Shown: positions 3,810 through 47,821 of the stretch, piece by piece
Layout of the letters: each line of letters begins with the position of its first letter
Numbering within the stretch: position 1 is the first letter of the stretch
IMG/VR virus record: IMGVR_UViG_3300029286_000009
Location: 124,001-188,000 of that record
Strand: one strand, 5' to 3'
Length of the DNA stretch: 64,000 bases
Program-made: the position numbers and the translations under genes
Notes under the pieces: model-generated
Told to the model about the DNA's origin: nothing
Database searches by the model: none
The model's input: only the letters and a program-made list of their open reading frames with translations

Positions 3810-4028
3810 TTATTCTTTGGGTGAAAATCTTTCGCAATTTCCGTAGTAGTTATCGTTGCAGGATGCCCAAGTGACTTCTCCAGTTCTGCAGTCGATATTT
3901 TTCTTAGAATGACACTCCCAAAAGCAACTATGTTTAGCTTTCCAGTGGAACGGCCACATGAATGTTGTATTCCCCGCAAACTTGCACTCTATGCATAACG
4001 TTTTGCATATAGGTGTTGCTATTTCCAT
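3810..4028 (-). CDS. Cys-rich hypothetical protein
   Basis: CIECK...C...C motifs. Confidence 0.5.
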   Translation of the reverse strand: MEIATPICKTLCIECKFAGNTTFMWPFHWKAKHSCFWECHSKKNIDCRTGEVTWASCNDNYYGNCERFSPKE

Positions 4029-4029
4029 A

Positions 4030-4290
4030 TCATTTCTCCGTGTTGATTTCTCTATTCCTTCTAGCCCATGCTAGAAATTGTGGTACCGTGCCATAAAATA
4101 CATCCTCGTCTTCGTCGCGTACACACACATGCGGGTCTATCCTGTTACCTTCGCAGTCTACGTCTGCTACCGATACGCAAAAGTCCATCGGGTCTCCAAC
4201 GTAGACCGCTACGTCGCGGTCGTTTATTTCTCTTACATAAGGTTTGTCCTCGTCCGTGTATATCGTAACTGTTACCATGTACCTCCTCAC
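4030..4290 (-). CDS. hypothetical protein
   Basis: SD GAGG, coupled to neighbours. Confidence 0.55.
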   Translation of the reverse strand: MRRYMVTVTIYTDEDKPYVREINDRDVAVYVGDPMDFCVSVADVDCEGNRIDPHVCVRDEDEDVFYGTVPQFLAWARRNREINTEK

Positions 4291-13874: not shown

Positions 13875-16082
13875 TTAATTTGCCTTCTCCTTGGTGCCGC
13901 TGAGGTATCTGTCAATTTCCTCCACCAACACACGATTGATAAGTTTACGGTTAGGCGATTTGGGCAATGAAGATTTATCCATTACTTCATTCAGTGCTTT
14001 GTCTTCCTTTTCCGCCCACTCGATTAGTTCCTCATACTTCCAAGCACCATTACGAATAGCGAGTAATTCTTCTGCGTCAGGGCGTCGTACGATTACGCCT
14101 TTACCTTCTAGTATTTCTCGTGCCATACGCATGAGACGAACAAGGTGAAGGGCGTGTTTAGAGTTCCCATGAATCGCAATTTTACCTTTTCTTCTGGTGA
14201 TAAGAACTTCGTTTGGAACCGTAAAACACACAACATGTCCATTTTTAACCCTGACAGGATGAATGTGTTGAGACTTACTCAAGTATGCACAGGTTCTAGT
14301 TTTTCCGATATATACCTGATACATTGCACAGTTGCCAAATTCTCTTGGTTTACGATCATAATAGTAAGGGCCCCATACTTGTGATACAATTCCGGCTTGT
14401 AAACACATTATCTGGACATCATCAGCTAGCCTCTTCAGGCTTGTATAGTATATACTACTAAATTTTCGGTATGTGCCGTCTCCGCCAATTAATCCTTCTA
14501 GCATCAATCTAGCTTGTCTTTCGTTAAGTTTGTCTTTAAAATGTGGGAGATGTTTGTTTTTTGCTTTGCCACACAAACCATATATCTCATCAGCAAGTTG
14601 GGCAGAGAATGAGTAAACACATTCTTTTGTAATTCTGCCTGACTTTAGTGTACGCTCATAATAGTATCGCTTCGCACCGTAACATTCTCTCAGATTTTCT
14701 AACCAAGGAATAAGGGGACTAGCAGGGTGTTGCGATATATTTAAAGACTTTGCTTTGTTTTTATAGAAAATTATAGACCCTTCGGCAATATATACACCAA
14801 TCAGCCTAAGTTTTTCGTTAGGTATCGGGTAATCTTCTCTGGGATTACAAGTTAATCTTGCATGAAAAGATCCGTAACGAGATTTTTCTATCTTGTCTAC
14901 CGATATTAGTGCCCAATCTGCCTGCTCTGGGTTGTATTTGATAGTAAAGTTATTGGATTTTTGTCGGTGGGTTCTGGTTACAAGTAATCTATGGTTGCTT
15001 GTCACAACACAGTTAGATTGTTGCATCCTTATCTCATATAGGAACCCAGAAGCTCTGTATGAATCTCGACCCAAGAAATGTTGATACTCTAAATTTCCTT
15101 CAGTGTTGATCGTTCCTAATTTATCGTTCTCAGATATTTCTCTGTATAACTTCCAACCTGTATCAGTCAAAAACTCGGTATCACTTAGATAACAGTCAAA
15201 TCCGTGCTTTTGTTCAAGTTCTGATCTTTTCGGATTACGTTCCTGCTTCCACTTTTCGTAATGATTCCAATCTTCCAGGTGGTTCTTGTAAGCAGAATAT
15301 CTTTGAAGATAGTTTACGAAGTCAGAATCGAATCCCAGCGTTCTGTTCGCCGCCCGTTCTAACACATCCTTGAGATGGTCTACATTAGCCTCTATGTAGA
15401 GTTGTTCAGTCACTACATTAACCATACGAACCATTTCTGGTCCTAGCTGTATCTTGGTGTCTTCCGTCAAGTGGGTCTGATCAACTAACCATTCACCTAC
15501 TTGAAGTTCTATCATTTTCAGAGCACCGTGTAGTTGGTCCTTCGGGAATTTCATTCCTTCTATCCCGTAGTCTGCACGCGTAGGATAGGTGGGCGGGTTG
15601 CTAGTCCAGCGATGATGGTTGCGCATCCTTTTGAGCTGTTGCATAGCGTACCCACTAAAGCGGTGTTTAAGTAGCTTACTGAGGAATGCATCCTTGATTT
15701 TGGAGAACCTTTCCATAAGTGGGTGTGCATAGATGATTGAATCTTCAGGAACGAACAACAGTTCCAGCATATTCGGGTTTCCATCTGCTGCTAATCCGAT
15801 CATTTTTTTAAGTGACCAGATTACAATATCACTATCGGGAACCAAGTCTCTCCTTGTTCCTTTAGCAACCAGAGGAATTACTTCTTTGCTATCAGTTTGC
15901 TCGAAGTTACCAAACCCGTAGAAATATTCTTTAGGAGGAATAGTCGCCCCCCGGTAATCCATATCTGATTCGGGTGTATTTGTCCCGTAAAGTTGAGATC
16001 CTGCGGGGGTAAGATAGACAATGTTTGAACCTATCCAGTTTTTTATGTTTATCAAGCTTCCTTCCCTTCTATAATTCTCCAT
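13875..16082 (-). CDS. Predicted nucleotidyltransferase (Pol-beta superfamily, Nuc-transf/COG3541-like), intein-interrupted
   Basis: GSQLYGTNTPESDMDYRG motif; NPNMLELLF; after intein removal KHGFD|SKHALHLVRLMRMAREIL. Confidence 0.85.
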   Translation of the reverse strand: MENYRREGSLINIKNWIGSNIVYLTPAGSQLYGTNTPESDMDYRGATIPPKEYFYGFGNFEQTDSKEVIPLVAKGTRRDLVPDSDIVIWSLKKMIGLAADGNPNMLELLFVPEDSIIYAHPLMERFSKIKDAFLSKLLKHRFSGYAMQQLKRMRNHHRWTSNPPTYPTRADYGIEGMKFPKDQLHGALKMIELQVGEWLVDQTHLTEDTKIQLGPEMVRMVNVVTEQLYIEANVDHLKDVLERAANRTLGFDSDFVNYLQRYSAYKNHLEDWNHYEKWKQERNPKRSELEQKHGFDCYLSDTEFLTDTGWKLYREISENDKLGTINTEGNLEYQHFLGRDSYRASGFLYEIRMQQSNCVVTSNHRLLVTRTHRQKSNNFTIKYNPEQADWALISVDKIEKSRYGSFHARLTCNPREDYPIPNEKLRLIGVYIAEGSIIFYKNKAKSLNISQHPASPLIPWLENLRECYGAKRYYYERTLKSGRITKECVYSFSAQLADEIYGLCGKAKNKHLPHFKDKLNERQARLMLEGLIGGDGTYRKFSSIYYTSLKRLADDVQIMCLQAGIVSQVWGPYYYDRKPREFGNCAMYQVYIGKTRTCAYLSKSQHIHPVRVKNGHVVCFTVPNEVLITRRKGKIAIHGNSKHALHLVRLMRMAREILEGKGVIVRRPDAEELLAIRNGAWKYEELIEWAEKEDKALNEVMDKSSLPKSPNRKLINRVLVEEIDRYLSGTKEKAN
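14163..15194 (-). mobile_element. Intein (344 aa) with LAGLIDADG homing endonuclease
   Basis: Starts CYLSDTEFLT..GW, ends VCFTVPNEVLITRRKGKIAIHGN with +1 Ser; motifs LIGVYIAEGS and LEGLIGGDG. Confidence 0.9.
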
Positions 16083-23324: not shown

Positions 23325-23741
23325 TTACTCTCTCTCTATCGCGTCATGTGTGGTCTCAACTTTTCCACACCTGGAGCATACACGACTCCACGCTAAATAG
23401 TTCCCATCACGAGATATAGCTGTTGGTTTATCCCATTTGTGTTCGCAGTCTCTCTGAATGGCTTCAAGGTTAAGAGCACGCCCGGCAAACTGCGTATCTT
23501 CGGGATCCCAGTCATACCATGTGATATTCCTACTTTCTTTCTGAAGAAAGTCTGGCACGTCTCTAAACACACAGATACCGACGAGACAATCTAGTTCGCA
23601 CAAAAGAGTTTCGACTCCTTCTCTGGTATAGTCTTGAAAGTTCGATAAGTCATACACATCCCAACTCCTGACACCATAATCGTCTTCTTCTGATGTAACT
23701 ATAATCATTTTATTTCCTTTCTTAGCATCCCAAATCAACAT
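23325..23741 (-). CDS. hypothetical protein with C-terminal CxH..CxxC
   Basis: 138 aa. Confidence 0.5.
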   Translation of the reverse strand: MLIWDAKKGNKMIIVTSEEDDYGVRSWDVYDLSNFQDYTREGVETLLCELDCLVGICVFRDVPDFLQKESRNITWYDWDPEDTQFAGRALNLEAIQRDCEHKWDKPTAISRDGNYLAWSRVCSRCGKVETTHDAIERE

Positions 23742-24513
23742 CTATAGTTGTGTATGTTGGGCTACCATAAGTTGCTTGCCCTACCCACACTGCTATTTTA
23801 TCGTTGATGTTCACTCTTACTTCTTCATGTGTATGACCACACAGAATAGAGAGTCTTGCATTTGTTTTGCAAGCCACTTCACTCAATGCCTTACCCATTC
23901 CTACATTGGAAAAGTGGGGAATGTACATATCGTCTGTTGCTAGCCCATTATACATACATGCTCTTACATAGGGTGGGGCATGAGTTACTACAATGATATG
24001 CCTTGCTCCAATCTTTAGTATTTGGTTGGTTAGTCTATTGGATGCTTTATCCGCTATCTTTTGCATCAAACCGAATGTTGCCCCGACTGTCAACCCGTGA
24101 AAATCATATATTGCACGATAGTCATTGAGTAGAAGCCCAGACCGTTGACTTCCGCCAGCACGACCATCCGCCCAGCCATCGTGACCAATTAGATAAGTGT
24201 GATCAGTTAGTTTAATTGCTGTGCAATTAGTAAGCCAAAATAAATTCTTGTGATCTTCTACAGACCTACGAACCATAGCATATACATGCTCGAATGTTGC
24301 CGCGTATATGTCATGGTTTCCTAAAACGAAGTACACAGGCATCGGGAGATTACCTAGCACTTTCAAGTGATATTTGATATGTTTCGCATCGCTAATATCG
24401 CCACTTATCACTACACCATCCGTTTCTGAAGTGGACAACCTACGCAAGAAATCGCCAAGTGCGTGATCATTCAACCATTCCAAATGGGGGTCAGTTACCC
24501 ATGCGAGTTGCAT
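23722..24513 (-). CDS. Calcineurin-like metallophosphoesterase
   Basis: TDPH, SGDIS, GNHD, THAP, CGHTH motifs. Confidence 0.9.
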   Translation of the reverse strand: MQLAWVTDPHLEWLNDHALGDFLRRLSTSETDGVVISGDISDAKHIKYHLKVLGNLPMPVYFVLGNHDIYAATFEHVYAMVRRSVEDHKNLFWLTNCTAIKLTDHTYLIGHDGWADGRAGGSQRSGLLLNDYRAIYDFHGLTVGATFGLMQKIADKASNRLTNQILKIGARHIIVVTHAPPYVRACMYNGLATDDMYIPHFSNVGMGKALSEVACKTNARLSILCGHTHEEVRVNINDKIAVWVGQATYGSPTYTTIDVDLGC

Positions 24514-25951: not shown

Positions 25952-27814
25952 TCAGGAAATTTTGACTAGACTGATATAGTGTGCCGACACAGCATATATG
26001 CCGCCGCTTCCTGCTTGTATCCTGTGTCCGCTGTTGATAAATGGTTCTGTGTCTGGGAAGGTCTTGTCCACGAAGATGGTATGAGATTTATCATATGTTA
26101 TGCGTGCTAGACCTCCGTCGGTTGCTGCAAATAGGTAGTTCCCAGCTGGTGTCTTTCCTCTGATTGTTCCTGCCCAACTACCATCTTGCCATGTGGTAGT
26201 GGTGTGTGCGAGGGGACTACCAAGAGAGTCTATGACCGTCCATGCAGTACGGGTGATGCCTTGATCTTGGTAGGCAACACCGAACCAGGCAATATTGCCA
26301 CTAAACAAGCATGTCGAGTCTACAAGCTGCCCTCGTATTGTAAGAGGAAGTTTGACGAAGTTATTAATGCCAGGCAGTTTTGCATTAAAGACGAATGCAA
26401 AATCAACTTCTCCTGCTCGGTAGAAACCAAACCCGAACTTTTCTCCTACCCAAAACAAGGATTGCCCGCTAAGTATATCTCCAATATATGTTGGAGCATA
26501 CACGTCTTCTCTCATTAACCTCCCATTCTCCACCCAGTATAGGTGGTGAGAGTTGACATCAAAAATAGGTAGATTTCCAAATTGATCGATGTTCCGTATT
26601 TCTTTTCCATTGAGCAATCGAGAACCCTTACCAACAAAAGTACTGGAAGGTGTGATTCTAAAACGCAGAAATGGGTCTAAATCGCCTTCTATAAAAGTTT
26701 GCCCTGTTTCCCGTTTGAATTTTCCACCTTCATGATACAACCAGAGCAAGTTACCCATGTAAGCGGTGTGAAGAATAGTTCCTTTCGTTTCGAAAATACG
26801 CTCGCACGTGACTTGTCCTCTTACCTGTATGGTTACGTGCTTCTGGGGTAGTTGGGTCTGACATATGGGGCATGTATGGCGACAGTGGGTTGCCCCGCAT
26901 AATTTGCACGTTTGCCATACTACTCTCTCGATAAGCTTTAAAGGAAATTTTCCGCGTAAGTCTTTCGTAAAGACTTGCTGAAAATGATGTAGTAAGTCAT
27001 CGGTTAAAGCTTCAAAATGTATTGCTGCTTTAGGGTATCTTACGTCAGGATGAAACACTGAGATTCTCTTGAGGGGGCGTTCTTCGTCTTGTAATAGATT
27101 CTTTCCAGTGGCTTTATAGACGCCTTCGTACGGAGCTACATACAACCAAGATTGGAATAAGAGAACATTGAAAGCGTACCAGTCAGAATCTAGTGTATGC
27201 GGATTTACCATTACAAGACGTTCTAGGGCAGGATCGCATAATAGTGGGTCTACAAATTTGGCTGTAAAAGTTTTGCAAAGGTAGGGACCAAACTGTGTGG
27301 AGTCTGCATCAATAACAAAAACATCCATATACTTAATTAGAATGTTAAGGTCATTTAGAGCGTCTCCTAACACCACACCTAAGTTGTGTGCTTCTGTGAT
27401 CCCATAGTGGAGATTCTGTGCGATGTGAGTAATCTGGTCATTCGATATCCCGCCACCCTCCCTGAACTTCCTTTCGCTATATTTCAGGATTACTTCAGCA
27501 TCTGCAACTAACGGCATCGAATACCCGATGATATTTCCGCCCTTCTCCCTAATCAAATCATTACCTTTTACTACACAGGACGGAAATGTTTGTTGTAGGA
27601 AAGCGGGGAGTTTTTGTTGGTGTTCTTTGATCCTCTCGTCAGCCATCTTCTGGGCATGCGGTTGTCCACGGTAATCAGAGTGGTTAGGGGGTTTAAATAT
27701 TTTGGCGATCAGACCGGGAGTTAACCTGTAGATGTCTGCTTCGCCCCCCTTGCCCCCAGACAATGCGTCTTTGGGAGTAAGAATCGTTTTCTTCCCACAA
27801 ATGTAAATATCCAT
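25952..27814 (-). CDS. Ser/Thr kinase-like protein of TerY-P type with long C-terminal domain
   Basis: GGKGGEADIY, IAKIF, VLGDALNDLNILI, IDADS, DWYAF; CKLC/CPIC Zn ribbon. Confidence 0.8.
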   Translation of the reverse strand: MDIYICGKKTILTPKDALSGGKGGEADIYRLTPGLIAKIFKPPNHSDYRGQPHAQKMADERIKEHQQKLPAFLQQTFPSCVVKGNDLIREKGGNIIGYSMPLVADAEVILKYSERKFREGGGISNDQITHIAQNLHYGITEAHNLGVVLGDALNDLNILIKYMDVFVIDADSTQFGPYLCKTFTAKFVDPLLCDPALERLVMVNPHTLDSDWYAFNVLLFQSWLYVAPYEGVYKATGKNLLQDEERPLKRISVFHPDVRYPKAAIHFEALTDDLLHHFQQVFTKDLRGKFPLKLIERVVWQTCKLCGATHCRHTCPICQTQLPQKHVTIQVRGQVTCERIFETKGTILHTAYMGNLLWLYHEGGKFKRETGQTFIEGDLDPFLRFRITPSSTFVGKGSRLLNGKEIRNIDQFGNLPIFDVNSHHLYWVENGRLMREDVYAPTYIGDILSGQSLFWVGEKFGFGFYRAGEVDFAFVFNAKLPGINNFVKLPLTIRGQLVDSTCLFSGNIAWFGVAYQDQGITRTAWTVIDSLGSPLAHTTTTWQDGSWAGTIRGKTPAGNYLFAATDGGLARITYDKSHTIFVDKTFPDTEPFINSGHRIQAGSGGIYAVSAHYISLVKIS

Positions 27815-27823
27815 AACACTACC

Positions 27824-28684
27824 TCATACAAGGGGGCCCGAGAATCGCTTACACACCACTACTGTAGTGTCGTCTGATAGCATCCCAAGTGCACGCAAGG
27901 ATGGACGAGTGATAGGGTTGGCCTTGGCTAGGAAACGTTGTAATTGGGCTGGATGATCATACCACGTTGCATCCTCCCAGATGTTCTGTATATTAGGAAT
28001 TATGACATCATTTCTACCAGGCAAAGTATGTCCTTCTTTCGCAAGGAAATCATCTATACCGTCTGTGGCTATTGCGATCGAAGTAACATCTCGGGGAAGC
28101 TTAACGATAGAGAATTGTCTGCAGGTCCCAGCATCCGGGTGATTCGCATCCAATTGATGGGCTAAATACGGCGGGGCATTTCCAGGAAATGGTCCTAACG
28201 CGGTGTGTTCTCCTTCAATCCAAATATGCCCGTCGCCAAAGTGAAATGCAAAACTCAGGTTGGGTGATAGATAGAACCCAATCACTGTAAAAAGATAACT
28301 TTCATAGATTAGATTCTTCACTACGTTCTCGTCGTCAGTAATGTCCACAGTACCCGCACGAATTAGCTCCAATAGTCTCTGGCGGCAACACTCCATTACC
28401 CAGGTAGGAATATCCTCCTCTGTAACCCACCAGGAGACGCGGCGTGCGTGTATTACAAGTGCAGGCACCAGATGCACTAATACTTGCGTGCATATTCGAG
28501 AACCAACTTCACTGAAACGCCCCGATCCGCAACCATCCGATACTACTGCGACTATATAGCCAGGGGTAGAAATGTGATCATACGCGTCTTGGTTGTTATA
28601 ACCCGCCGAATCATGGAAGGTACCTATTACACTCGCACCTGCAATCTTGTAGTTGTGCATTATATTCTCCGCATCGGGTAGCAA
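27824..28684 (-). CDS. PP2C-like protein phosphatase
   Basis: GASVIG..H..NNQDA, VVSDGCGS, FGDG, IATDG, DDTT. Confidence 0.85.
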   Translation of the reverse strand: MLPDAENIMHNYKIAGASVIGTFHDSAGYNNQDAYDHISTPGYIVAVVSDGCGSGRFSEVGSRICTQVLVHLVPALVIHARRVSWWVTEEDIPTWVMECCRQRLLELIRAGTVDITDDENVVKNLIYESYLFTVIGFYLSPNLSFAFHFGDGHIWIEGEHTALGPFPGNAPPYLAHQLDANHPDAGTCRQFSIVKLPRDVTSIAIATDGIDDFLAKEGHTLPGRNDVIIPNIQNIWEDATWYDHPAQLQRFLAKANPITRPSLRALGMLSDDTTVVVCKRFSGPLV

Positions 28685-28771
28685 AGAATGCCGCTTACTG
28701 TTGATTCAGTTATCAGAGATGGCATGTTGTATCCTTTCGAGAGGGGGCGGTTACCCACCCCCACTGTTGTA

Positions 28772-29593
28772 TCAAGTAGTAAAGCCACCTAGCACGGTTT
28801 GGCTGCCAAAACCTGCTTGGGAAACCGGTCCCAGGTTGGCTGCTTGAGAGACCGCGATGGCACTTTGAGAAAAGACAGCAAACGCTTTTCGGATGTCAGA
28901 CGCTGAATTTCCTGGGGTGAGGATCCACTGTGCAGGAATCCCCATACCGGTAAATACGCGGGTAAAGTTGGTATGACGGTCTTCTATACCCATCCCAACT
29001 ATAATATTACGCTCCATACGCAAGAGGTCCTCTGCAATAGTCTTAACATCTTGGGCGGACACCCCGCGTGAGGCGTTGTCTGCCCCATCAGTTGCGAACA
29101 GTGTAACTGTTCGGCAGGACTGTGCTTCTTCAGCAAGTTCTTGTGCTTTAAGGAAAACTGTTCCAAGTACCACCTTAGCTTGTGCATAAAGAGGAGTACT
29201 CCCGTAGCTTGGATCGTAAACACCAAGACCGAAAGGTGGCACGTTGTCCAGCTCGCAATAGGGGGTGTAAACTTGTCCAGATAGTGCACGAGCGTGGAAA
29301 AGAATGGCGTCCTTTTGTTTAGATTCTTTTAATGCTCGGATACACCCGTTCACACCCTTTACCATGGCATCAGGACCATCTTTGATGCAACTGATGGATC
29401 CGGAGTCATCAATTAGTAGAGTAACCAATATCACTGTGGAGGGTAGTTGCATCTGCCCCACATTGTTCCCCATGCCACCCTGGATTTGGGCACCAATATC
29501 CTGCAAGTTTAGAAGGTTGGCAGAAGTAGGGGACAACACCCCGTCGTCTTGTGCAGACTGGAGTAAGTTCTGAAGACTTGCGTTCTGGCTCAT
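28772..29593 (-). CDS. vWA-domain protein (TerY-like)
   Basis: MIDAS-like LLIDDSGSI, STPLY, ATDG.DN. Confidence 0.8.
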   Translation of the reverse strand: MSQNASLQNLLQSAQDDGVLSPTSANLLNLQDIGAQIQGGMGNNVGQMQLPSTVILVTLLIDDSGSISCIKDGPDAMVKGVNGCIRALKESKQKDAILFHARALSGQVYTPYCELDNVPPFGLGVYDPSYGSTPLYAQAKVVLGTVFLKAQELAEEAQSCRTVTLFATDGADNASRGVSAQDVKTIAEDLLRMERNIIVGMGIEDRHTNFTRVFTGMGIPAQWILTPGNSASDIRKAFAVFSQSAIAVSQAANLGPVSQAGFGSQTVLGGFTT

Positions 29594-29681: not shown

Positions 29682-30143
29682 TTAGTTATATTCTTCAGTT
29701 TCTATAAAATCAGGATATATCTCTTCTATGGGGAGCCGGTTAAAACGTAAAAAATCGTCTCGATACAAGTAATATCCCATCCCTTCATGCCACCACTGCC
29801 CATTTGCGCACCAGTGTTCGTCTATACTCAGCCCATGATCGGGCTGCCACACTGGAATAGGAGAAAGATGGCATCCTTTCGGCCCCAAACTACAACAATT
29901 TCTGCATACCAGTTCTTCTACATTTACATGCCACATATCTTGTACGCCTTTCTGTTTTTGATATCTTGCGCGGGTAAACAAAAACCGGAAATTCTCTATG
30001 GGGGTTGTTGGGACGATTTCTACGCGTCCGTATTGACGCTCCACCGCCCCAACAGTTCTATGAATAATACTAGCTTTTGTAAAGGGGAGAACGCCTTCCC
30101 TTGCGTTCCCCCCGGTCCATATACTTTCAATATAGTAAAACAC
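29682..30143 (-). CDS. hypothetical protein; true start uncertain (N-terminal half overlaps structured RNA)
   Basis: Cys-rich C-terminal part MWHVNVEELVCRNC...; 5' part coincides with strong hairpins. Confidence 0.4.
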   Translation of the reverse strand: MFYYIESIWTGGNAREGVLPFTKASIIHRTVGAVERQYGRVEIVPTTPIENFRFLFTRARYQKQKGVQDMWHVNVEELVCRNCCSLGPKGCHLSPIPVWQPDHGLSIDEHWCANGQWWHEGMGYYLYRDDFLRFNRLPIEEIYPDFIETEEYN

Positions 30144-30205
30144 TACATCGTTAGTTGCCTAGCGTATTCCGTTCGCTTATTCATGCTTTAGGCGCTTGAA
30201 AATTC

Positions 30206-30280
30206 CGTGTCGCACTACTGCTATGCTACCACGCCATATTTTTTGGGGGCGTGGGGTGGATCTGCACCACCGTCTACACG
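30206..30280 (-). ncRNA. Circularly permuted tRNA-like domain (Y RNA/YrlA-like or two-piece tmRNA-like)
   Basis: CGTGT-AGAC-GGTGG-TGCAGAT-CCACC-CCACGCC-C-CCA-AAAAATAT-GGCGTGG-TA-GCAT-AGCAGTA-GTGC-G-ACACG; all four cloverleaf stems pair, 3' half precedes 5' half. Confidence 0.75.
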
Positions 30281-30431
30281 TAAGTTGCCATAGCACTGCT
30301 AATGGGAAATTGCTTAACGGCGTTTAGCCTTGGGTCAATCACCTCACGGGATTTAGCCTGATACACCCCTATGCCGTAGTGGGTGCTCTTGTGAACGTGC
30401 TCCTAAGCTTACGACCCAACTGTATGGAACC

Positions 30432-30519
30432 TTCTTGCTTGCTAGATAGTATATTCGTCTAATTATTTAACGTCCAATCGCCCCAACTAACTATTTGTAC
30501 ACTACCTAGCAAGCAAGAA
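30432..30519 (-). repeat. 22-bp inverted repeat (long hairpin)
   Basis: TTCTTGCTTGCTAG arms are perfect; extension pairs via two G-U only on minus strand. Confidence 0.85.
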
Positions 30520-30605
30520 AGTCCTGGTATTTTTGGCGGTGTGCCATCTACCTACACATGTGTAGCATGTAGGGTGGCTAAAGACAGCACACCACAGACA
30601 TAACA

Positions 30606-31376
30606 TTAACTGGTGGTTCGTATCGCGTCCAGAAAGCAGGAATAAACTTCTTCTCCTATCGCTGCGACGGGCACCGCCACCTGATTGGCACGTGCTCTTG
30701 CCTGCTTTACCTCACGTATCATCTGGTCAAGGACACTGAGTCCAACCATCTTCTGCCGTGGGGTGGGGCAACCGGTGTAACGTGTATTCTCATAGTGACC
30801 AACGACCTTTTGTTCGTCAACCACAATGACCTGTTCCTTATGTTCTTTTGTCGCGGGGGCGATGGACACGGGAACCTTCGTCATCTCGGTCTTATTCGCC
30901 TTTACAGGCTCAACAGTTCGACGTACACCTTCCAGCTCAGCAGATGTGTCGTTCTCCCAGTGTACGGTTGTATCCAGCGTAGGAATCCTGTCCGCAAGAT
31001 TCCGAATCCGGATAAGTTCTTTTTCAAGCCACATCAACATCGTGACCGGAACTGCTGTGATCACTTTGCCATTGGGCAGCGTAAGATCTGCAACCGCCTG
31101 CATATTGGCGAGCTCACGCTGGTACTCGGCGTCCATGCGATCAACAATTGCCTTGCCTATATACTTAAATCTTTCCGGCACGGTTGTCGTCAGACTGACC
31201 CTTTCTCCAGCACCGGCTTCCTCCGCCACACGATCATCGTCGTGCATCTTCAAAATTTTAACGTGTCCATTGAGCAGTTCTTTCTTGTCCAAGAGTCGAC
31301 TGGTCTCGTCCAGCATCTTAGCCTGAACCGCCTCCAGCTCCGGAATTTTTGCCAAAAGTTCGTGCAACATTCCCAT
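30606..31376 (-). CDS. Conserved coiled-coil protein (recalled as DUF7873-like)
   Basis: LHELLA, TTV, VPVTMLMWLEK, IPTLD..W, ATKEH.EQV, VVG, VKQARARAN pattern; family name from memory only. Confidence 0.55.
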   Translation of the reverse strand: MGMLHELLAKIPELEAVQAKMLDETSRLLDKKELLNGHVKILKMHDDDRVAEEAGAGERVSLTTTVPERFKYIGKAIVDRMDAEYQRELANMQAVADLTLPNGKVITAVPVTMLMWLEKELIRIRNLADRIPTLDTTVHWENDTSAELEGVRRTVEPVKANKTEMTKVPVSIAPATKEHKEQVIVVDEQKVVGHYENTRYTGCPTPRQKMVGLSVLDQMIREVKQARARANQVAVPVAAIGEEVYSCFLDAIRTTS

Positions 31377-39773: not shown

Positions 39774-40523
39774 ATGAATGCCAAGCCGCTCGACCACCCG
39801 ATCTACGGGTCTATCCCACACCTGCCTCAATCACGTTTGGGGCCGTCTGATAAGCAAGCCTCGATTGGACATGTCCGCATCGCAACTGAAAAGCCACGCG
39901 ACAAATGCGATCTAATCATTGTGAGCGAGAAAATAGACGGGAGCAATGTTGGTGTAGCTAAGTTACCAGATAGCTCTCTCGTTCCCCTAATACGGTCAGG
40001 GTACGTAGCCGATACTTCGCCCTATCTCCAGCACCGCTATTGGGCTAGCTGGGTGTATGAGCACAGCCACAGGTTTAACTCACTTTTATCTAACGGGGAA
40101 TGGTGTGTAGGAGAGTGGTGCATTCAAGCACATGGAACTAAGTATACTTTTCTGGATGAACCTTTTTTCCTATTTGATATTTTCTCTACTGATAAACGTA
40201 TCACTAAATTACAGCTTGACTTAAGAAACAACTCTCTTTTAAAGCCATTTTGTTGCCCGCGGGTGTTCTTCTGTGCCAACTCAGCTCTTCCTGTTTGCGA
40301 AGCATCGGCAGTTCTCGGGGATCACGGTTTTCACGGAGCTCTCGACAAGGCAGAAGGTGCGGTTTGGCGGGTGGAACGTAATGGAATGGTAGACTTTCTA
40401 TGTAAATACGTTCGCCCACAGAAATATGACGGTATCTACCTCCCTGAGATAGCAGGTACTCATTATATTGTGTGGAACGAATGGGGTAGCGATTGTCAAT
40501 CACTTAAACATTTATTAAGATAG
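39774..40523 (+). CDS. ATP-dependent RNA ligase family protein
   Basis: YGSIPHL, EKIDGSN (motif I), GEW, LFDI, EGAVWR, CKYVR. Confidence 0.8.
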   Translation: MNAKPLDHPIYGSIPHLPQSRLGPSDKQASIGHVRIATEKPRDKCDLIIVSEKIDGSNVGVAKLPDSSLVPLIRSGYVADTSPYLQHRYWASWVYEHSHRFNSLLSNGEWCVGEWCIQAHGTKYTFLDEPFFLFDIFSTDKRITKLQLDLRNNSLLKPFCCPRVFFCANSALPVCEASAVLGDHGFHGALDKAEGAVWRVERNGMVDFLCKYVRPQKYDGIYLPEIAGTHYIVWNEWGSDCQSLKHLLR

Positions 40524-41829: not shown

Positions 41830-43320
41830 ATGCGAGCCAAGTTGCCATATTGGGATAAAACTATGGAGTTAGCTCTTAATGTGGCTTTTGCAATAAGAGA
41901 TACAGGTCATTCCGTGTATGTTAACGGTGGACAGGCTCGTGAGTCTGTATTAGCGGTATTGGAAAATCGTGACCTTCACCCCGCTAAAGACATCGATATG
42001 TGCACATCAATGCCTGTTAGTGTAATGAAGCAATTGATAGTAGATGCACATATAGTGCCTACTGGTGAACAGTACGGGACGCTTACGTTTGTAAAGGATG
42101 GTGTTAGTGTAGAGGTTACCCAATACCGGAAAGATTTTGGTGATGTGAACGGCCCAACTGACAATCGTAAAGAGGTTTTCCCCACATTTTCATGTGACCC
42201 TGTTAGTGGTCCTCATTTTGACGTAGCCCGCCGTGACCTTACTATCAATGGGCTCTTGATAGACCCTTTTACAAGAGAAGTCATCGACTATGTAGGTGGA
42301 GTTGAAGACCTTTGTGCACACAAGATTAAGTTTATTGGAGGTGCTGTTGAGCGTTGCAGAGAAGATGCTCTTCGGTTGTTGCGGGCTATACGTTTCGCGG
42401 CACGCTATGATTACTCTCTGTCTCCTGAGGTGTTTGATGCAGCCGAAGACGAAATCGTGCAGAGACGCCTGAAGCTTCTGTCCGCTGAACGTGTAAGAGA
42501 TGAGTTCTTGGCCATTATGTCTGTTGAATCAGGGCACAATGTGGCGTGGGCACTCACAATGCTCGCTGAATTTGGTGTGCTGGGTTTCTGGTTCCCCGAA
42601 CTAGTTGCTATGATGGACGTGGAACAAAACATATATCACAGCCATGATGTTTGGGGACATACACTATTAGCTGTTGAACAGTCTGATCCTAATTTATATT
42701 GTCGTTTATTCGCTTTGTTCCATGACATAGGCAAACCCCCAACACAAGAGTTCGTTCATGAGGATTATGGCTACTCGTTTCATGGTCACCCCCATGTATC
42801 GTGTGATATGTTGGACACAATATTCGAACGATTGCGTTTCGGGCAAACCCGTACAGGCCAGTATGATTTTAATACAGACATACTTAAACATCTGGTGGGG
42901 CACCACATGGATGCATTCATTGATGGCAAGATGTCGCGTATGCTAAAACGTATTGGTATCGCACAGTATGGGAAGCATATGCTCGATTTGTCTTGGCGAG
43001 CAGGACGAGCAGATTTCTACGGAAGGAGCCCCAGGTGGCAAGTCAACCCGGATTTTCGGGGGGCAGACGAAAAGCTGCACCATACATACAATAAGGTTGC
43101 TGCTTACATCCATAGCATAGAGAACCCAGTGTTCTCAACTCGCGATTTGCAAATCGACGGGCGAGTAGTCATGCAAGAACTCCAAATTCCTCCGGGACCA
43201 GTTGTAGGTGAGGTGCTGAAACACCTTTTAGCTACAGTTCAAGATAACCTGGTTGCTAACACACAAGAGGAACTACTGTCTGAAGCTAAGCTGTATTGGC
43301 GAACCAGGGGTATAAACTAG
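41830..43320 (+). CDS. cca: Class II nucleotidyltransferase (CCA-adding/poly(A) polymerase family) with HD domain
   Basis: GGQAR..DID, RRDLTINGL, EDALRLLRAIRFAAR, SAERV.DE, HDVWGHT, LFHDIGKP. Confidence 0.85.
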   Translation: MRAKLPYWDKTMELALNVAFAIRDTGHSVYVNGGQARESVLAVLENRDLHPAKDIDMCTSMPVSVMKQLIVDAHIVPTGEQYGTLTFVKDGVSVEVTQYRKDFGDVNGPTDNRKEVFPTFSCDPVSGPHFDVARRDLTINGLLIDPFTREVIDYVGGVEDLCAHKIKFIGGAVERCREDALRLLRAIRFAARYDYSLSPEVFDAAEDEIVQRRLKLLSAERVRDEFLAIMSVESGHNVAWALTMLAEFGVLGFWFPELVAMMDVEQNIYHSHDVWGHTLLAVEQSDPNLYCRLFALFHDIGKPPTQEFVHEDYGYSFHGHPHVSCDMLDTIFERLRFGQTRTGQYDFNTDILKHLVGHHMDAFIDGKMSRMLKRIGIAQYGKHMLDLSWRAGRADFYGRSPRWQVNPDFRGADEKLHHTYNKVAAYIHSIENPVFSTRDLQIDGRVVMQELQIPPGPVVGEVLKHLLATVQDNLVANTQEELLSEAKLYWRTRGIN

Positions 43321-46720: not shown

Positions 46721-47821
46721 ATGCCAAGTGACACAATTGTAAGATGTGCACGAGTTGATGCTATTACTGAGCATCCCCACGCAGACAACTTGTTGATATT
46801 GGACATTCTTGGTTGGCAAGTAATTACTAATAGAGACACAAACCCCAAGGTAGGAGAGTTAAGAGTTTTTATTGCACCTGATCTTATTCTTCCTCAGGAA
46901 TTGGCAGAGCAACTAGGAGTTACTGTATATTTAAAAAATGGGAATCGGGTAAGACAAGTAAAGCTCAGAGGAATTATGTCATTTGGTATCGCCGCGTCTA
47001 ACCATTGGAATTTCCAAGAGGGCGAAGAAGTATCTGAGCAACTAGGTATAACAAAGTATAGCCCTCCTGAAGAGTTCACAGTCGGTGATCAAGCACGGGA
47101 ACATCCACTTTTTACTCACTACTCTAACATCGAAAACTTTAGAAACTTTCCTAAAGCTTTTGAGGAAGGTGAAGTGGTAGCAATTTATGAAAAGATTGAA
47201 GGAACAAACTCTAGAATGGGAGGTGTTCGTATAACTGAAGCAGAAGTTATGGGTGTTGACCAGAGAATGCCTATCCCCCGTAAACACTTGCACCATGAGA
47301 CTTTTGTGGGGTTTATGATTGGCTCTCATAGCACACAAAAGAAGTTTGAGGCCGCTAAACCTACGATTTACGCATCTCCCTATAACCCACACGTTCGGGA
47401 TGCAATTTGCAAAATTATGTATGACTATAATGCCAACGTGGTCATTTTCTTTGGAGAAATATTTGGTAGGGGCATTAAGAATGGTGCTAGAAGTATGACT
47501 TACGGAAGGAACACACCGGACTGGCGGCTATTCGATATTTACATAGACGGTAGATTCGCTGGTGTTCAGGAACTAACTAATTTGGCAACTCTATACGGAC
47601 TAGAGTTAGCTCCTCTCCTTTATTGTGGGCCATTTAGTTTGGATGCCTTAAAATTGCATGCCAATCAACCAACTCAGTTAATGGACCAAAGCCCCCATCT
47701 CAGTGAAGGAGTGGTCATAAAGCCTCTAAGCGAACGTGTGTATGATGGGTGCAGGCGTCTCTTGCTCAAATACAAGAGCGACGCCTATGAGGAACTAAAA
47801 GCAAAGGGAAAAGCTGGGTGA
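46721..47821 (+). CDS. RNA ligase, DRB0094/Rnl5 family
   Basis: N-terminal OB (HPHADNL..GWQVI..FIAPD), VRQVKLRG..SFG, EKIEGTN, FGEIFG, FDI, EGVVIK, KYKSDAY. Confidence 0.85.
   Translation: MPSDTIVRCARVDAITEHPHADNLLILDILGWQVITNRDTNPKVGELRVFIAPDLILPQELAEQLGVTVYLKNGNRVRQVKLRGIMSFGIAASNHWNFQEGEEVSEQLGITKYSPPEEFTVGDQAREHPLFTHYSNIENFRNFPKAFEEGEVVAIYEKIEGTNSRMGGVRITEAEVMGVDQRMPIPRKHLHHETFVGFMIGSHSTQKKFEAAKPTIYASPYNPHVRDAICKIMYDYNANVVIFFGEIFGRGIKNGARSMTYGRNTPDWRLFDIYIDGRFAGVQELTNLATLYGLELAPLLYCGPFSLDALKLHANQPTQLMDQSPHLSEGVVIKPLSERVYDGCRRLLLKYKSDAYEELKAKGKAG

What the first reader, a model, noticed from the sequence alone, without database searches (positions are those of the whole stretch)
30206..30280. 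Circularly permuted tRNA-like domain with an internal CCA
Seen: on the minus strand the 3' half comes first (anticodon-stem strand CGTGT, variable AGAC, T arm GGTGG-TGCAGAT-CCACC, acceptor strand CCACGCC, discriminator C, CCA). An 8-nt linker AAAAATAT follows, then the 5' half (GGCGTGG, T8 A9, D arm GCAT-AGCAGTA-GTGC, G26, ACACG). All four stems pair with canonical spacing, but there is no anticodon loop, no G3-U70, and the T loop is non-TTC. Established: this topology occurs in bacterial YrlA Y RNAs (Ro60 partners), in two-piece tmRNA precursors of alphaproteobacteria, and in permuted tRNAs of Cyanidioschyzon. Inference: this element fits none cleanly, since it has a full D stem unlike tmRNA, an internal CCA, and no Ro/TROVE gene in the window. 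It may be a new phage tRNA-mimic RNA whose partner is the adjacent 30606 protein or the TerY-P module; RNase P/3' trimming would yield a two-piece, CCA-ended RNA.
Basis: partly seen in the sequence, partly recalled or inferred. Interest (0 to 1): 0.85.

Follow-up and report, generated by a model that had tools for sequence, protein, structure and literature searches.

The report
Phage tRNA-mimic RNA paired with DUF7873
The reported "inside-out" tRNA is real: it belongs to a widespread, apparently undescribed family of tRNA-mimicking RNAs that always sit beside one uncharacterised protein gene (DUF7873) in phages and bacteria, so the two probably work together.

Summary
A strict pattern finds it once in the window and never in 200 shuffled windows.

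It is not an isolated oddity. The gene just upstream (30606-31376, -) is a DUF7873 protein. In all 22 first-round DUF7873 loci, in 52 of 54 non-redundant metagenome loci (the other two have weak hits) and in 6 of 6 cultured phages examined, a covariance model finds the same permuted module next to the gene on the same strand. All four stems covary.

In 62 of 80 modules with a 7-bp acceptor stem, CCA follows the discriminator. Most have U at -1 and G at +1, which looks like an RNase P site.

Relatives give sub-threshold, full-length hits to Rfam YrlA. However, the Ro60-binding motif is nearly absent, no TROVE gene lies nearby, and one complete carrier phage has no Ro60.

Best reading: a YrlA-type tRNA-mimic RNA with a new protein partner, probably nicked by RNase P into a two-piece, CCA-ended RNA. 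Its function is unknown, and processing, expression and protein binding are untested. I rate it a new variant of a known kind.

The parts
30606..31376 (-). DUF7873 (PF25283) gene, 256 aa. It is the conserved protein partner encoded directly upstream of the RNA.
   Evidence: Pfam E = 7.4e-48. The family has 2,529 representatives at 50% identity, all single-domain and about 250 aa. AF2 model pLDDT 92.6, with no significant PDB or BFVD fold match.
30448..30476 (-). Sigma-70-like promoter candidate (TGGACG, 17-nt spacer, TATACT) between the protein gene and the RNA.
   Evidence: Consensus scan only; the count is not above the shuffled expectation. Klebsiella phage FBKp24 has a promoter annotated at the equivalent place.
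30352..30361 (-). Distal copy of the family's strand-specific repeat motif (TCAGGCTAAA).
   Evidence: Sequence read. Motif family AGGYTNA: AGGCTC occurs 49 times upstream of modules, against 3 on the opposite strand and 2.9 expected.
30323..30334 (-). Proximal motif CCCAAGGCTAAA. It ends exactly 42 nt before the module.
   Evidence: A CYS(N0-4)ARRNTNA motif occurs in 57/85 loci at a median of 42 nt (IQR 39-44) from the module; the window's spacing is 42.
30281..30322 (-). 42-nt spacer. In most relatives it is the 5' strand of a long interrupted stem formed with the 3' flank.
   Evidence: Spacer/3'-flank duplex: median z = -2.64, with 56/84 loci below -2; the window gives only z = -1.33. The Myxococcota alignment shows the stem with covariation.
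30206..30280 (-). Circularly permuted tRNA-like module, in the order AC3, variable, T arm, acceptor 3' strand, C73, CCA, linker, acceptor 5' strand, D arm, AC5.
   Evidence: R1 covariance model 72.5 bits, the only hit in 64 kb. Covariation in all four stems. After in-silico re-permutation ARAGORN calls it a tRNA.
30244..30246 (-). Encoded CCA after discriminator C73 (30247); predicted mature 3' end of the upstream piece.
   Evidence: CCA follows N73 in 62 of 80 family modules with 7-bp acceptors.
30235..30236 (-). Predicted RNase P cleavage site, between U(-1) at 30236 and G(+1) at 30235.
   Evidence: Position -1 is T in 44/80 and +1 is G in 67/80. The linker CCCAAAAAATAT is identical in L087, and the short-linker consensus is C-CCA-AAAAC-NYAT. 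Precedent: M. smegmatis YrlA (PMC4201824). Not tested here.
30114..30205 (-). 3' flank of the RNA. It holds degenerate motif-like stretches (TCAAGCGCCTAAAG, TAGGCAACTAAC).
   Evidence: Read. In the family, an ARRNTNA motif lies within 14 nt after AC5 in 40/85 loci.
30081..30113 (-). 11-bp G+C-rich hairpin followed by UUU; likely 3' end or terminator of the RNA.
   Evidence: MFE folds. It is not called by the terminator scan because the U tract is short. Comparable hairpins follow the module in L007, L009, L012, L024, FBKp24 and phiRSL1.

Best explanation
The element is the tRNA-like head of a roughly 360-nt non-coding RNA. This RNA belongs to a widespread family with YrlA-type topology, and it forms an autonomous two-gene module with the protein encoded just upstream, DUF7873.

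Shown here:
- The RNA folds as a cloverleaf opened at the anticodon loop and closed at the acceptor end.
- All four stems covary across the family.
- The module is almost invariably adjacent to a DUF7873 gene on the same strand, in phages and bacteria.
- The flanks carry strand-specific AGGYUNA repeats. One copy sits a fixed 42 nt before the module.
- In most relatives the 5' spacer pairs with the 3' flank, giving a rod-like shape similar to a Y RNA.

Inferred:
- Host RNase P cuts between U(-1) at 30236 and G(+1) at 30235.
- 3' exonucleases trim the A-rich linker back to the encoded CCA at 30246-30244. The phage's own CCA-adding enzyme (41830-43320) could maintain that end.
- The product would be a nicked, two-piece tRNA look-alike with genuine tRNA ends and no anticodon.
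- DUF7873 binds the AGGYUNA motifs at the base of the stem.
- The tRNA-shaped head presents the complex to, or competes for, tRNA-recognising machinery.

I think the RNA most likely acts as a tether or regulator of DUF7873, in the way a Y RNA acts for Ro60. It could be a pseudo-substrate that holds a tRNA-directed activity of DUF7873 in check. The setting would be the phage-host conflict over tRNAs, since in cultured phages the module lies inside tRNA gene clusters.
For: Structure and chance.

Family and covariation:
- MAFFT alignment of 15 modules: 95.5% of cells paired, 19/21 pairs with changes on both sides, slid controls 33-48%.
- An independent alignment of 14 short-linker members re-predicts the cloverleaf, with 17/20 pairs covarying.

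Association with DUF7873:
- 22/22 first-round loci.
- 49 downstream plus 3 upstream strong hits in 54 non-redundant metagenome loci, median 169 nt from the gene.
- 6/6 cultured phages: phiRSL1, FBKp24, Ronaldo, RHph_TM30, K479, Mimi.
- Reciprocal search starting from the RNA: 4/4 testable modules have DUF7873 upstream.

Specificity: 0 hits in 151 kb of unrelated viral DNA, and a single hit in the 64-kb window.

No third partner: no recurrent Pfam family and no TROVE among 59 flanking ORFs.

Processing signals: CCA 62/80, U(-1) 44/80, G(+1) 67/80.

Flank features: motif enrichment and fixed 42-nt spacing; flank pairing.

YrlA likeness: full-length sub-threshold hits, L006 37.9 bits and L009 35.6 bits.

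Context: the window also encodes a CCA-adding-enzyme-like protein, RlaP and two RNA ligases. The module lies within tRNA clusters in isolates.
Against: - There is no expression, end-mapping or binding data for any family member.
- DUF7873 has no recognisable RNA-binding or catalytic domain and no significant fold match. Its binding to the RNA is inferred from adjacency alone.
- The training modules were first picked by a script that required pairing and CCA. This biases and slightly biases R1 towards CCA.
- The window's own copy is atypical. Its T loop TGCAGAT is unique among 115 hits, and its D loop lacks GG. It gave no YrlA hit at E <= 10, and its flank duplex is weak (z = -1.33).
- Many bacterial members have a closed 4-bp acceptor hairpin with no CCA. 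Cleavage into two pieces therefore cannot be essential to the family's core function.
- R1 hits of about 27-48 bits also arise at junctions of tandem tRNA genes. Some weak 'second modules' may be artefacts of this kind.
Confidence: 0.6

Rival explanations
1. It is an ordinary YrlA-type Y RNA that works with a Ro60 (Rsr/TROVE) protein encoded elsewhere in the phage or in the host. Its position next to DUF7873 would then be incidental.
For: The T, acceptor-stem and D arms come in the same order, with a rod-like stem. Relatives give full-length YrlA hits at E of 1e-4 to 1e-5. Only 64 kb of the 259.7-kb contig could be inspected.
Against: - All YrlA hits are far below the gathering score of 69 bits, and the window copy gives none.
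- The Ro60-binding motif GNCGAAN0-1G is present in only 2/85 loci.
- No TROVE is found in the window's large ORFs or in 59 flanking ORFs.
- The complete Gordonia phage Ronaldo genome has the module but no annotated Ro protein and no unassigned CDS above 356 aa.
- Adjacency to DUF7873 is near-obligate.
Confidence: 0.12
2. It is a cis-acting part of the DUF7873 mRNA. In this view a tRNA-like UTR element is cut by RNase P to define or stabilise the mRNA end, as with MALAT1-mascRNA, or is bound by DUF7873 for autoregulation. It would not be a separate trans-acting RNA.
For: The element is always on the gene's strand and usually within 90-350 nt downstream; in three to four loci it is 149-386 nt upstream. 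In the window a 24-bp inverted repeat (30524-30501 with 30450-30426) could be a processing hairpin in a read-through transcript.
Against: - A promoter is annotated between the gene and the RNA in FBKp24, and a sigma-70-like site lies at 30476-30448 in the window.
- The RNA region has its own terminator-like hairpin.
- Many loci carry two modules or an extra tRNA-like unit.
- The distance to the gene reaches 1 kb.
- The conserved flanks and fixed 42-nt spacing are more elaborate than a cleavage signal would need.
Confidence: 0.15
3. It is a true circularly permuted tRNA gene. Its transcript would be circularised and re-opened to give a decoding tRNA, as in Cyanidioschyzon merolae.
For: After in-silico re-permutation, 79 of 80 modules are called tRNA by ARAGORN. 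Most have canonical T and D loops. After AC5 many read AU(C/U/A)A, a possible remnant of positions 32-33. The window encodes two RNA ligases.
Against: - No anticodon loop can be assembled from the flanks. Instead the flanks pair with each other into a long stem.
- No bulge-helix-bulge signal, group I intron or small ribozyme was detected.
- Two modules in L008 are about 90 nt apart, leaving no room for intron halves.
- Bacterial members have closed 4-bp acceptor hairpins that cannot give tRNA ends.
- N73 is a pyrimidine in 56/80, which is unlike normal tRNA sets (the comparison rests on general knowledge).
Confidence: 0.05
4. It is a two-piece (permuted) tmRNA-like rescue RNA.
For: There is a weak hit to Rfam tmRNA_permuted in the correct register (12.7 bits, E = 5.3). 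The order T arm, acceptor 3' strand, CCA, spacer, acceptor 5' strand is the same. One relative locus carries a genuine phage tmRNA 650 nt from DUF7873.
Against: - The score is far below the gathering threshold of 47 bits.
- There is no G3:U70 (C3:G70 here, U3:A70 in L003).
- A full D stem and an anticodon-type stem are present.
- No conserved tag frame exists: the hexamer repeats read as (R/K)-hydrophobic in varying frames, with no consistent start or stop.
- ARAGORN, which detects permuted tmRNA, finds nothing.
Confidence: 0.03
5. It is a chance arrangement, or the decayed junction of two neighbouring tRNA genes.
For: A loose pattern gives about 18 chance hits in 366 kb. R1 scores tandem-tRNA junctions at 27-48 bits.
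Against: The strict pattern gives 0/200 shuffles. There is no tRNA anywhere in the window. The R1 score is 72.5 bits with a fully complementary acceptor. Stems covary across the family and the position relative to DUF7873 is conserved.
Confidence: 0.01

Closest known systems
YrlA, the bacterial and phage Y RNA-like RNAs (Rfam RF02553) that partner Ro60/Rsr
   Same: Both have a permuted tRNA-like domain in the order (V), T arm, acceptor-like stem, D arm. In both, the domain sits on a long stem formed by the RNA's 5' and 3' parts. Both are encoded next to a protein partner on the same strand and occur in phages and bacteria. Relatives of the window element give full-length YrlA matches at E of about 1e-4 to 1e-5.
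   Different: All scores are below the gathering threshold, and the window copy does not match at all. The GNCGAAN0-1G Ro60 motif is in only 2/85 loci. The neighbour is DUF7873, not TROVE. Most phage members have a 7-bp acceptor stem with an encoded CCA and linker. AGGYUNA repeats lie in the flanks.
Mycobacterium smegmatis YrlA (Chen et al. 2014, PMC4201824)
   Same: It has a 7-bp acceptor-like stem, is cleaved by RNase P in vitro and in vivo, and its upstream fragment ends in CCA. This is the same two-piece outcome predicted here.
   Different: In M. smegmatis the CA is added after transcription and the RNA is bound by Rsr. Here CCA is encoded in 62/80 modules and no Ro60 is associated. Processing has not been tested here.
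Two-piece (circularly permuted) tmRNA of alphaproteobacteria and others (Rfam tmRNA_permuted, RF04321)
   Same: The gene order is acceptor piece (T arm, acceptor 3' strand, CCA), then an intervening segment, then the acceptor 5' strand. There is a weak hit in the correct register.
   Different: There is no G3:U70, no tag reading frame and no pseudoknots detected. A full D arm and an anticodon-type stem are present. The score is 12.7 bits against a threshold of 47.
Circularly permuted tRNA genes of Cyanidioschyzon merolae and Thermofilum pendens (from general knowledge)
   Same: The 3' half precedes the 5' half, joined across the acceptor end with CCA and a short linker.
   Different: Those mature through a circular intermediate into decoding tRNAs, using a bulge-helix-bulge motif and the splicing endonuclease. 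Here no anticodon loop can be rebuilt and the flanks pair into a rod.
Type III toxin-antitoxin pairs such as ToxIN (from general knowledge; a functional analogy only)
   Same: Both are self-contained protein-plus-structured-RNA two-gene modules scattered across phages and unrelated bacteria with variable neighbours. Both have repeated RNA motifs that could bind the protein.
   Different: The gene order is reversed and the repeats are hexamers rather than ~36-nt units. No toxin-like domain is recognised and there is no PADLOC hit. Toxicity has not been tested.

Membership tests
YrlA / Y RNA-like (RF02553) | Scores at or above the Rfam gathering threshold (69 bits) | tested here: not met
   The window gives no hit even at E <= 10. 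The best relatives reach 37.9 and 35.6 bits.
YrlA / Y RNA-like (RF02553) | tRNA-like domain with T arm, acceptor-like stem and D arm in that 5'-to-3' order | tested here: met
YrlA / Y RNA-like (RF02553) | GNCGAAN0-1G motif near the 5' end (the proposed Ro60 contact; PMC4201824) | tested here: not met
   Present in 2 of 85 loci within 90 nt upstream of the module. The window has CCCAAGGCTAAA instead.
YrlA / Y RNA-like (RF02553) | Encoded within about 4 kb of a Ro60/TROVE gene on the same strand | tested here: not met
   No TROVE in the window's six ORFs of 330 aa or more, nor in 59 flanking ORFs of 17 loci. None is annotated in the complete Ronaldo genome. The remaining ~196 kb of the window's own contig could not be inspected.
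YrlA / Y RNA-like (RF02553) | Bound by Ro60/Rsr in vivo | not testable with these tools
   Requires immunoprecipitation.
Permuted tmRNA (RF04321) | Scores at or above the Rfam gathering threshold (47 bits), or is detected by ARAGORN | tested here: not met
   12.7 bits, E = 5.3. ARAGORN finds none.
Permuted tmRNA (RF04321) | G3:U70 alanine identity pair | tested here: not met
   C3:G70 in the window; U3:A70 in L003.
Permuted tmRNA (RF04321) | Tag reading frame with a resume codon and stop in the coding piece | tested here: not met
   No conserved frame. The frames of the hexamer repeats vary and lack consistent starts or stops.
Canonical tRNA (RF00005) | Contiguous cloverleaf with an anticodon loop | tested here: not met
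   ARAGORN and Rfam find none. The element is called a tRNA only after artificial re-permutation with an added loop.
Circularly permuted tRNA gene (Cyanidioschyzon type) | 3' half, CCA, linker, then 5' half, with complementary acceptor strands | tested here: met
Circularly permuted tRNA gene (Cyanidioschyzon type) | Flanks that can rebuild an anticodon loop through a processing motif and ligation | tested here: not met
   The flanks pair into a long stem. No intron or ribozyme family was detected. Bacterial members have closed acceptor hairpins.
DUF7873-associated permuted tRNA-like RNA (the family defined here) | High-scoring R1 module on the same strand next to a DUF7873 gene | tested here: met
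   In the window the module scores 72.5 bits and begins 325 nt after the gene's stop.
DUF7873-associated permuted tRNA-like RNA (the family defined here) | CYS..ARRNTNA motif about 42 nt upstream of the module | tested here: met
   The motif lies at 30334-30323 and the spacer is exactly 42 nt.

The most novel reading that the evidence does not exclude
After RNase P cleavage and trimming, the two-piece RNA would be a genuinely aminoacylatable, anticodon-less tRNA. It would work with DUF7873 as a new translation-linked or tRNA-surveillance system. Possibilities include delivering an amino acid, occupying a ribosomal or EF-Tu site, or acting as the RNA antidote of a tRNA-directed toxin. Phages would deploy it alongside their tRNA clusters.
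Probability: 0.15. Interest if true: 0.9.

Novelty: new variant of a known kind. Interest (0 to 1): 0.75.

Why it matters
Bacterial Y RNAs with tRNA-like domains are known only as partners of Ro60, and the purpose of their tRNA mimicry is still unclear. This work points to a second, large set of such RNAs. The partner protein family has about 2,500 clusters at 50% identity. It occurs in jumbo and small phages and in several bacterial phyla. These RNAs are tied instead to an uncharacterised 250-aa protein with no matched fold. Most encode their own CCA and an RNase P-like site.

That gives an independent system for asking what a tRNA-shaped head does for a ribonucleoprotein. It assigns a likely RNA partner to a domain of unknown function. 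It also corrects annotations in cultured phages: a 'suppressor tRNA' in Klebsiella phage FBKp24, and small ORFs drawn over the RNA in Gordonia phage Ronaldo and Vibrio phage K479. Six cultured phages carry the module, so the predictions can be tested directly.

Tried and rejected
- Standard detectors. ARAGORN and Rfam at gathering thresholds find nothing in the window.
- Natural permuted intron-exon (group I) origin giving a circular tRNA. There is no Intron_gpI or ribozyme hit at E <= 10. Tandem modules lie only about 90 nt apart. The flanks pair with each other.
- Reading the AGGYTC hexamer repeats as a peptide or tag ORF with (R/K)-hydrophobic repeats. The frame relative to DUF7873 varies, stops intervene, and there is no consistent start or end. 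The signal is better described at the nucleotide level.
- Ro60 partner. No TROVE was found.
- Defence-system and naming libraries. PADLOC and NCBIfam give nothing for DUF7873 or its neighbours.
- Fold of DUF7873. Two AF2 models were made (pLDDT 80.8 and 92.6). Foldseek against PDB and BFVD, and profile searches against PDB sequences, give no significant match. The best weak hits (Cas7, Pur-alpha) have TM scores below 0.2. The ESM Atlas returns only other DUF7873 clusters.
- Closest relative, P0002 (64% identity). Its contig shows the same ~520-nt gap after the gene, but no DNA was available.
- DNA pattern searches for near relatives of the window's odd T and D loops. One pattern was mis-spaced by one base and returned only chance matches. 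The other returned one chance match. Neither set contains an R1 hit, so I used them as a negative control.
- Literature. No paper mentions DUF7873 or a permuted tRNA-like RNA in phages outside the Ro60 context.
Full report
**1. The observation**

The order is AC-stem 3' strand CGTGT, variable AGAC, T arm GGTGG-TGCAGAT-CCACC, acceptor 3' strand CCACGCC, C73, CCA, linker AAAAATAT, acceptor 5' strand GGCGTGG, TA, D arm GCAT-AGCAGTA-GTGC, G26, AC-stem 5' strand ACACG. An unconstrained fold of 361 nt recovers this permuted cloverleaf.

A strict pattern requires four fully paired stems, canonical spacing, CCA and at most one G-U. It hits once in the window, at this site, and never in 200 dinucleotide-shuffled windows. 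ARAGORN and Rfam at gathering thresholds report nothing in the window. At E <= 10 the only relevant match is a 12.7-bit hit to permuted tmRNA, in the correct register.

The window is part of IMG/VR contig IMGVR_UViG_3300029286_000009, a 259.7-kb phage contig. It has no close DNA relative among deposited phages.

**2. Surroundings in the window**

The element lies in a non-coding stretch of about 670 nt.

- Upstream on the same strand is a 256-aa DUF7873 protein, 30606-31376 (Pfam E = 7.4e-48).
- Downstream, the listed 153-aa ORF has no Met before residue 70. It probably starts near 29936, so the G+C-rich hairpin at 30113-30084 is not coding.
- A sigma-70-like site lies at 30476-30448. This is a consensus match only.

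Elsewhere the window encodes several RNA-end repair functions:

- an RlaP nucleotidyltransferase carrying a LAGLIDADG intein;
- a protein resembling a CCA-adding enzyme;
- two RNA ligases;
- a metallophosphoesterase;
- a PP2C phosphatase.

None of the six ORFs of 330 aa or more is a TROVE protein.

**3. A family, and a protein partner**

*First homologues.* Homologues of the DUF7873 protein led to loci with the same arrangement. In L003 a permuted cloverleaf follows the gene, and every stem has a different sequence from the window's.

*Pattern script.* A pattern script then found such modules downstream of DUF7873 in many viral and bacterial loci. Most have canonical T loops (TTCRAAT) and D loops (AGYGGTA).

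*Covariation.* On a MAFFT alignment of 15 modules, 95.5% of cells are paired. Nineteen of 21 pairs change on both sides, and slid controls give 33-48%. These 15 sequences had been selected for pairing, so two less circular checks matter:

- Rfam's own YrlA model hits seven of these sites full length, although below threshold.
- RNAalifold on 14 further members with about 140-nt flanks re-predicts the cloverleaf, with 17 of 20 pairs covarying.

*Covariance model R1.* A model built from the 15 modules (R1) gives these results:

| Test set | Result |
|---|---|
| First-round loci with enough downstream DNA | strong hit in 22/22 |
| The 64-kb window | one hit only, 72.5 bits |
| 54 non-redundant metagenome loci | 49 strong hits downstream on the gene's strand (median 169 nt) |
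| Same 54 loci, remainder | 3 strong hits upstream; 2 weak hits only |
| Six cultured phages examined | 6/6 |
| 151 kb of unrelated viral DNA | 0 hits |

*Reciprocal search.* Starting from an RNA sequence pattern alone gave five high-scoring modules. Four have DUF7873 just upstream. The fifth locus is too short to tell.

*Method caveat.* R1 also scores junctions of tandem tRNA genes at 27-48 bits. Only hits of about 45 bits or more were counted.

*Neighbours.* Among 59 flanking ORFs from 17 loci, no Pfam family occurs twice and none is TROVE. The unit is therefore a self-contained protein-plus-RNA pair. In isolates it sits inside the phage's tRNA gene cluster.

**4. Anatomy of the family and how the window copy fits**

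*Acceptor end.*
- Of 115 distinct hits, 80 have a 7-bp acceptor stem.
- In 62 of those 80, CCA follows the discriminator.
- Short linkers are A-rich and end in YAT. The window's CCCAAAAAATAT is identical to that of L087.
- Long linkers fold into a hairpin that stacks on the acceptor stem.
- Position -1 is U in 44/80 and +1 is G in 67/80.
- The discriminator is a pyrimidine in 56/80.
- Myxococcota and related bacterial copies instead have a closed 4-bp acceptor hairpin. They are followed by a second, non-permuted tRNA-like unit and a terminator.

*Upstream flank.* The flanks are rich in a strand-specific motif. AGGCTC occurs 49 times, against 3 on the opposite strand and 2.9 expected. One copy (CYS..ARRNTNA) ends a fixed 42 nt (IQR 39-44) before the module in 57/85 loci. 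In the window, CCCAAGGCTAAA ends at 30323, exactly 42 nt before the module.

*Stem formed by the flanks.* The 45 nt before the module and the 60 nt after it are complementary well beyond shuffled controls. The median z is -2.64, and 56 of 84 loci fall below -2. In the Myxococcota alignment this forms a long interrupted stem with covariation. The window's value is weaker, z = -1.33.

*Oddities of the window copy.* Its T loop (TGCAGAT) is unique among the 115 hits, and its D loop (AGCAGTA) lacks GG. A similar pairing, a G at T-loop position 55 with an A-G D loop, recurs in the second tRNA-like units of L021, L023 and L025. The odd loops may therefore be an alternative elbow rather than decay. 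This is inference.

**5. The protein**

DUF7873 has 2,529 representatives at 50% identity in 1.84 billion proteins. All are single-domain and about 250 aa. With a 118-sequence alignment AF2 gives pLDDT 92.6: an alpha/beta protein with a long beta-hairpin and a conserved Arg/Lys-rich helix, K..AR.RAN.

Nothing significant emerged from the following searches:

- Foldseek against PDB or BFVD;
- profile searches of PDB sequences;
- PADLOC, NCBIfam or PHROGs;
- the ESM Atlas, which returned only other DUF7873 clusters.

Its binding to the RNA is inferred from near-obligate adjacency, not shown.

**6. Mechanism**

*Shown.* The RNA is conserved and structured. Its topology is YrlA-like: a tRNA-shaped head on a rod. 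It carries motif repeats at fixed spacing. It is obligately linked to DUF7873.

*Inferred.*
- RNase P cuts at 30236/30235.
- The linker is trimmed to the encoded CCA.
- The two pieces stay annealed as a nicked tRNA look-alike.
- DUF7873 binds the AGGYUNA motifs.
- The head engages tRNA-recognising machinery.

The processing step has direct precedent. M. smegmatis YrlA has a 7-bp acceptor stem, is cut by RNase P, and ends in CCA in vivo (PMC4201824). Bacterial members lack a cleavable acceptor end, so the core function must rest on the tRNA elbow and the protein. The CCA end would be a phage-lineage elaboration.

I favour a tether, regulator or pseudo-substrate role, in the way a Y RNA serves Ro60. 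The rivals are an ordinary Ro60 Y RNA, a cis-acting UTR element, a true permuted tRNA, a tmRNA-like RNA, and chance. They are weighed in their own sections.

**7. Comparison with what is known, and novelty**

The element works like a YrlA RNA but fails the tests that define the family:

- it does not reach the Rfam threshold;
- it lacks the Ro60 motif;
- it has no Ro60 neighbour.

A complete carrier genome, Gordonia phage Ronaldo, has no annotated Ro60 protein and no unassigned CDS long enough to be one. I found no paper on DUF7873 or on such RNAs outside the Ro60 context. The jumbo-phage survey PMC7824862 mentions only TROVE with a tRNA-like partner.

I therefore rate this a new variant of a known kind. 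The TerY-P alternative is not.

Noticed in passing
window 13875-16082 (-): A 735-aa ORF with an N-terminal RlaP (RNA-repair Pol-beta nucleotidyltransferase) domain and a LAGLIDADG domain at residues 524-592. It is probably an intein-containing RlaP.
   Followed up: no
window 39774-40523 (+), 41830-43320 (+), 46721-47821 (+), 23722-24513 (-): A cluster of RNA-end repair functions: two RNA ligases, a CCA-adding-enzyme-like protein (PolyA_pol head, HD and tRNA_NucTran2_2 domains) and a calcineurin-like phosphoesterase.
   Followed up: partly
window 30501-30524 and 30426-30450 (-): A 24-bp inverted repeat (GGACTTTCTTGCTTGCTAGGTAGT with its complement) brackets the promoter-like site upstream of the RNA. 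Rfam scored it weakly as Phe_leader. It could be a processing hairpin in a read-through transcript.
   Followed up: no
L029 (Klebsiella phage vB_KpM_FBKp24, NC_061421.1) 4013-4097: The record's 'tRNA-OTHER / tRNA-Sup-TTA', also called by ARAGORN, borrows the T arm and acceptor 3' strand of the permuted module. Its own acceptor pairs at only 5/7, so it looks like a mis-call rather than a suppressor tRNA.
   Followed up: partly
L030 (Gordonia phage Ronaldo) 3989-4198; L174 (Vibrio phage K479) 2408-2563: Small annotated ORFs (gp125 in Ronaldo; VPHK479_0060 in K479, on the opposite strand) overlap the R1 RNA hits and are probably spurious.
   Followed up: no
L004 821-1191: A standard one-piece tmRNA (Rfam 112.9 bits; tag GEPIAFPGLQLQAAA) lies about 650 nt upstream of a DUF7873 gene on a short metagenome contig. 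The contig ends before the place where the permuted module would be expected.
   Followed up: partly
L021 2249-2321, L022 3555-3625, L023 3545-3615, L025 3371-3441: In Myxococcota loci a second, non-permuted tRNA-like unit follows the permuted one. It has unusual T loops (TGCGAYY), D loops without GG (AGTAGTA) and, in several, an anticodon loop YCGACAA (C33 in L023). ARAGORN and Rfam call these units tRNA-Val, tRNA-Gly or tRNA-Arg.
   Followed up: partly
5' flanks of many loci, e.g. L018 3330-3360, L012 3268-3296, L014 3280-3310: Tandem AGGYTC hexamers read in one frame as alternating Arg/Lys and hydrophobic residues (RLRLRFRSRF, KLKLKVRLN, RLKVRIRII). The frame relative to DUF7873 varies and no start is evident. 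Whether any of this is translated remains open.
   Followed up: partly
L029 3868-3933, L028 3895-3975, L012 3297-3369, L024 3283-3357, L026 3311-3378: Many loci carry an additional upstream permuted module with a tRNA-Leu-like D arm (GCGGAATTGGTAGACGC), A73 and almost no anticodon-type stem. The window has no such second module.
   Followed up: no
window 25952-29593 (-): A PP2C phosphatase (27824-28684) lies next to a 620-aa ORF with a weak PADLOC PD-T4-6 match (E = 0.0017) and a 273-aa ORF matching a PHROG family of unknown function. It does not co-occur with the RNA in other loci.
   Followed up: partly
L133 1881-2040 and tRNA arrays in L152, L157, L165, L169: Method note: junctions between tandem tRNA genes, especially paralogues with similar acceptor stems, score 27-48 bits with the permuted model. 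They can pass for permuted modules unless acceptor complementarity and flanking tRNA halves are checked.
   Followed up: yes
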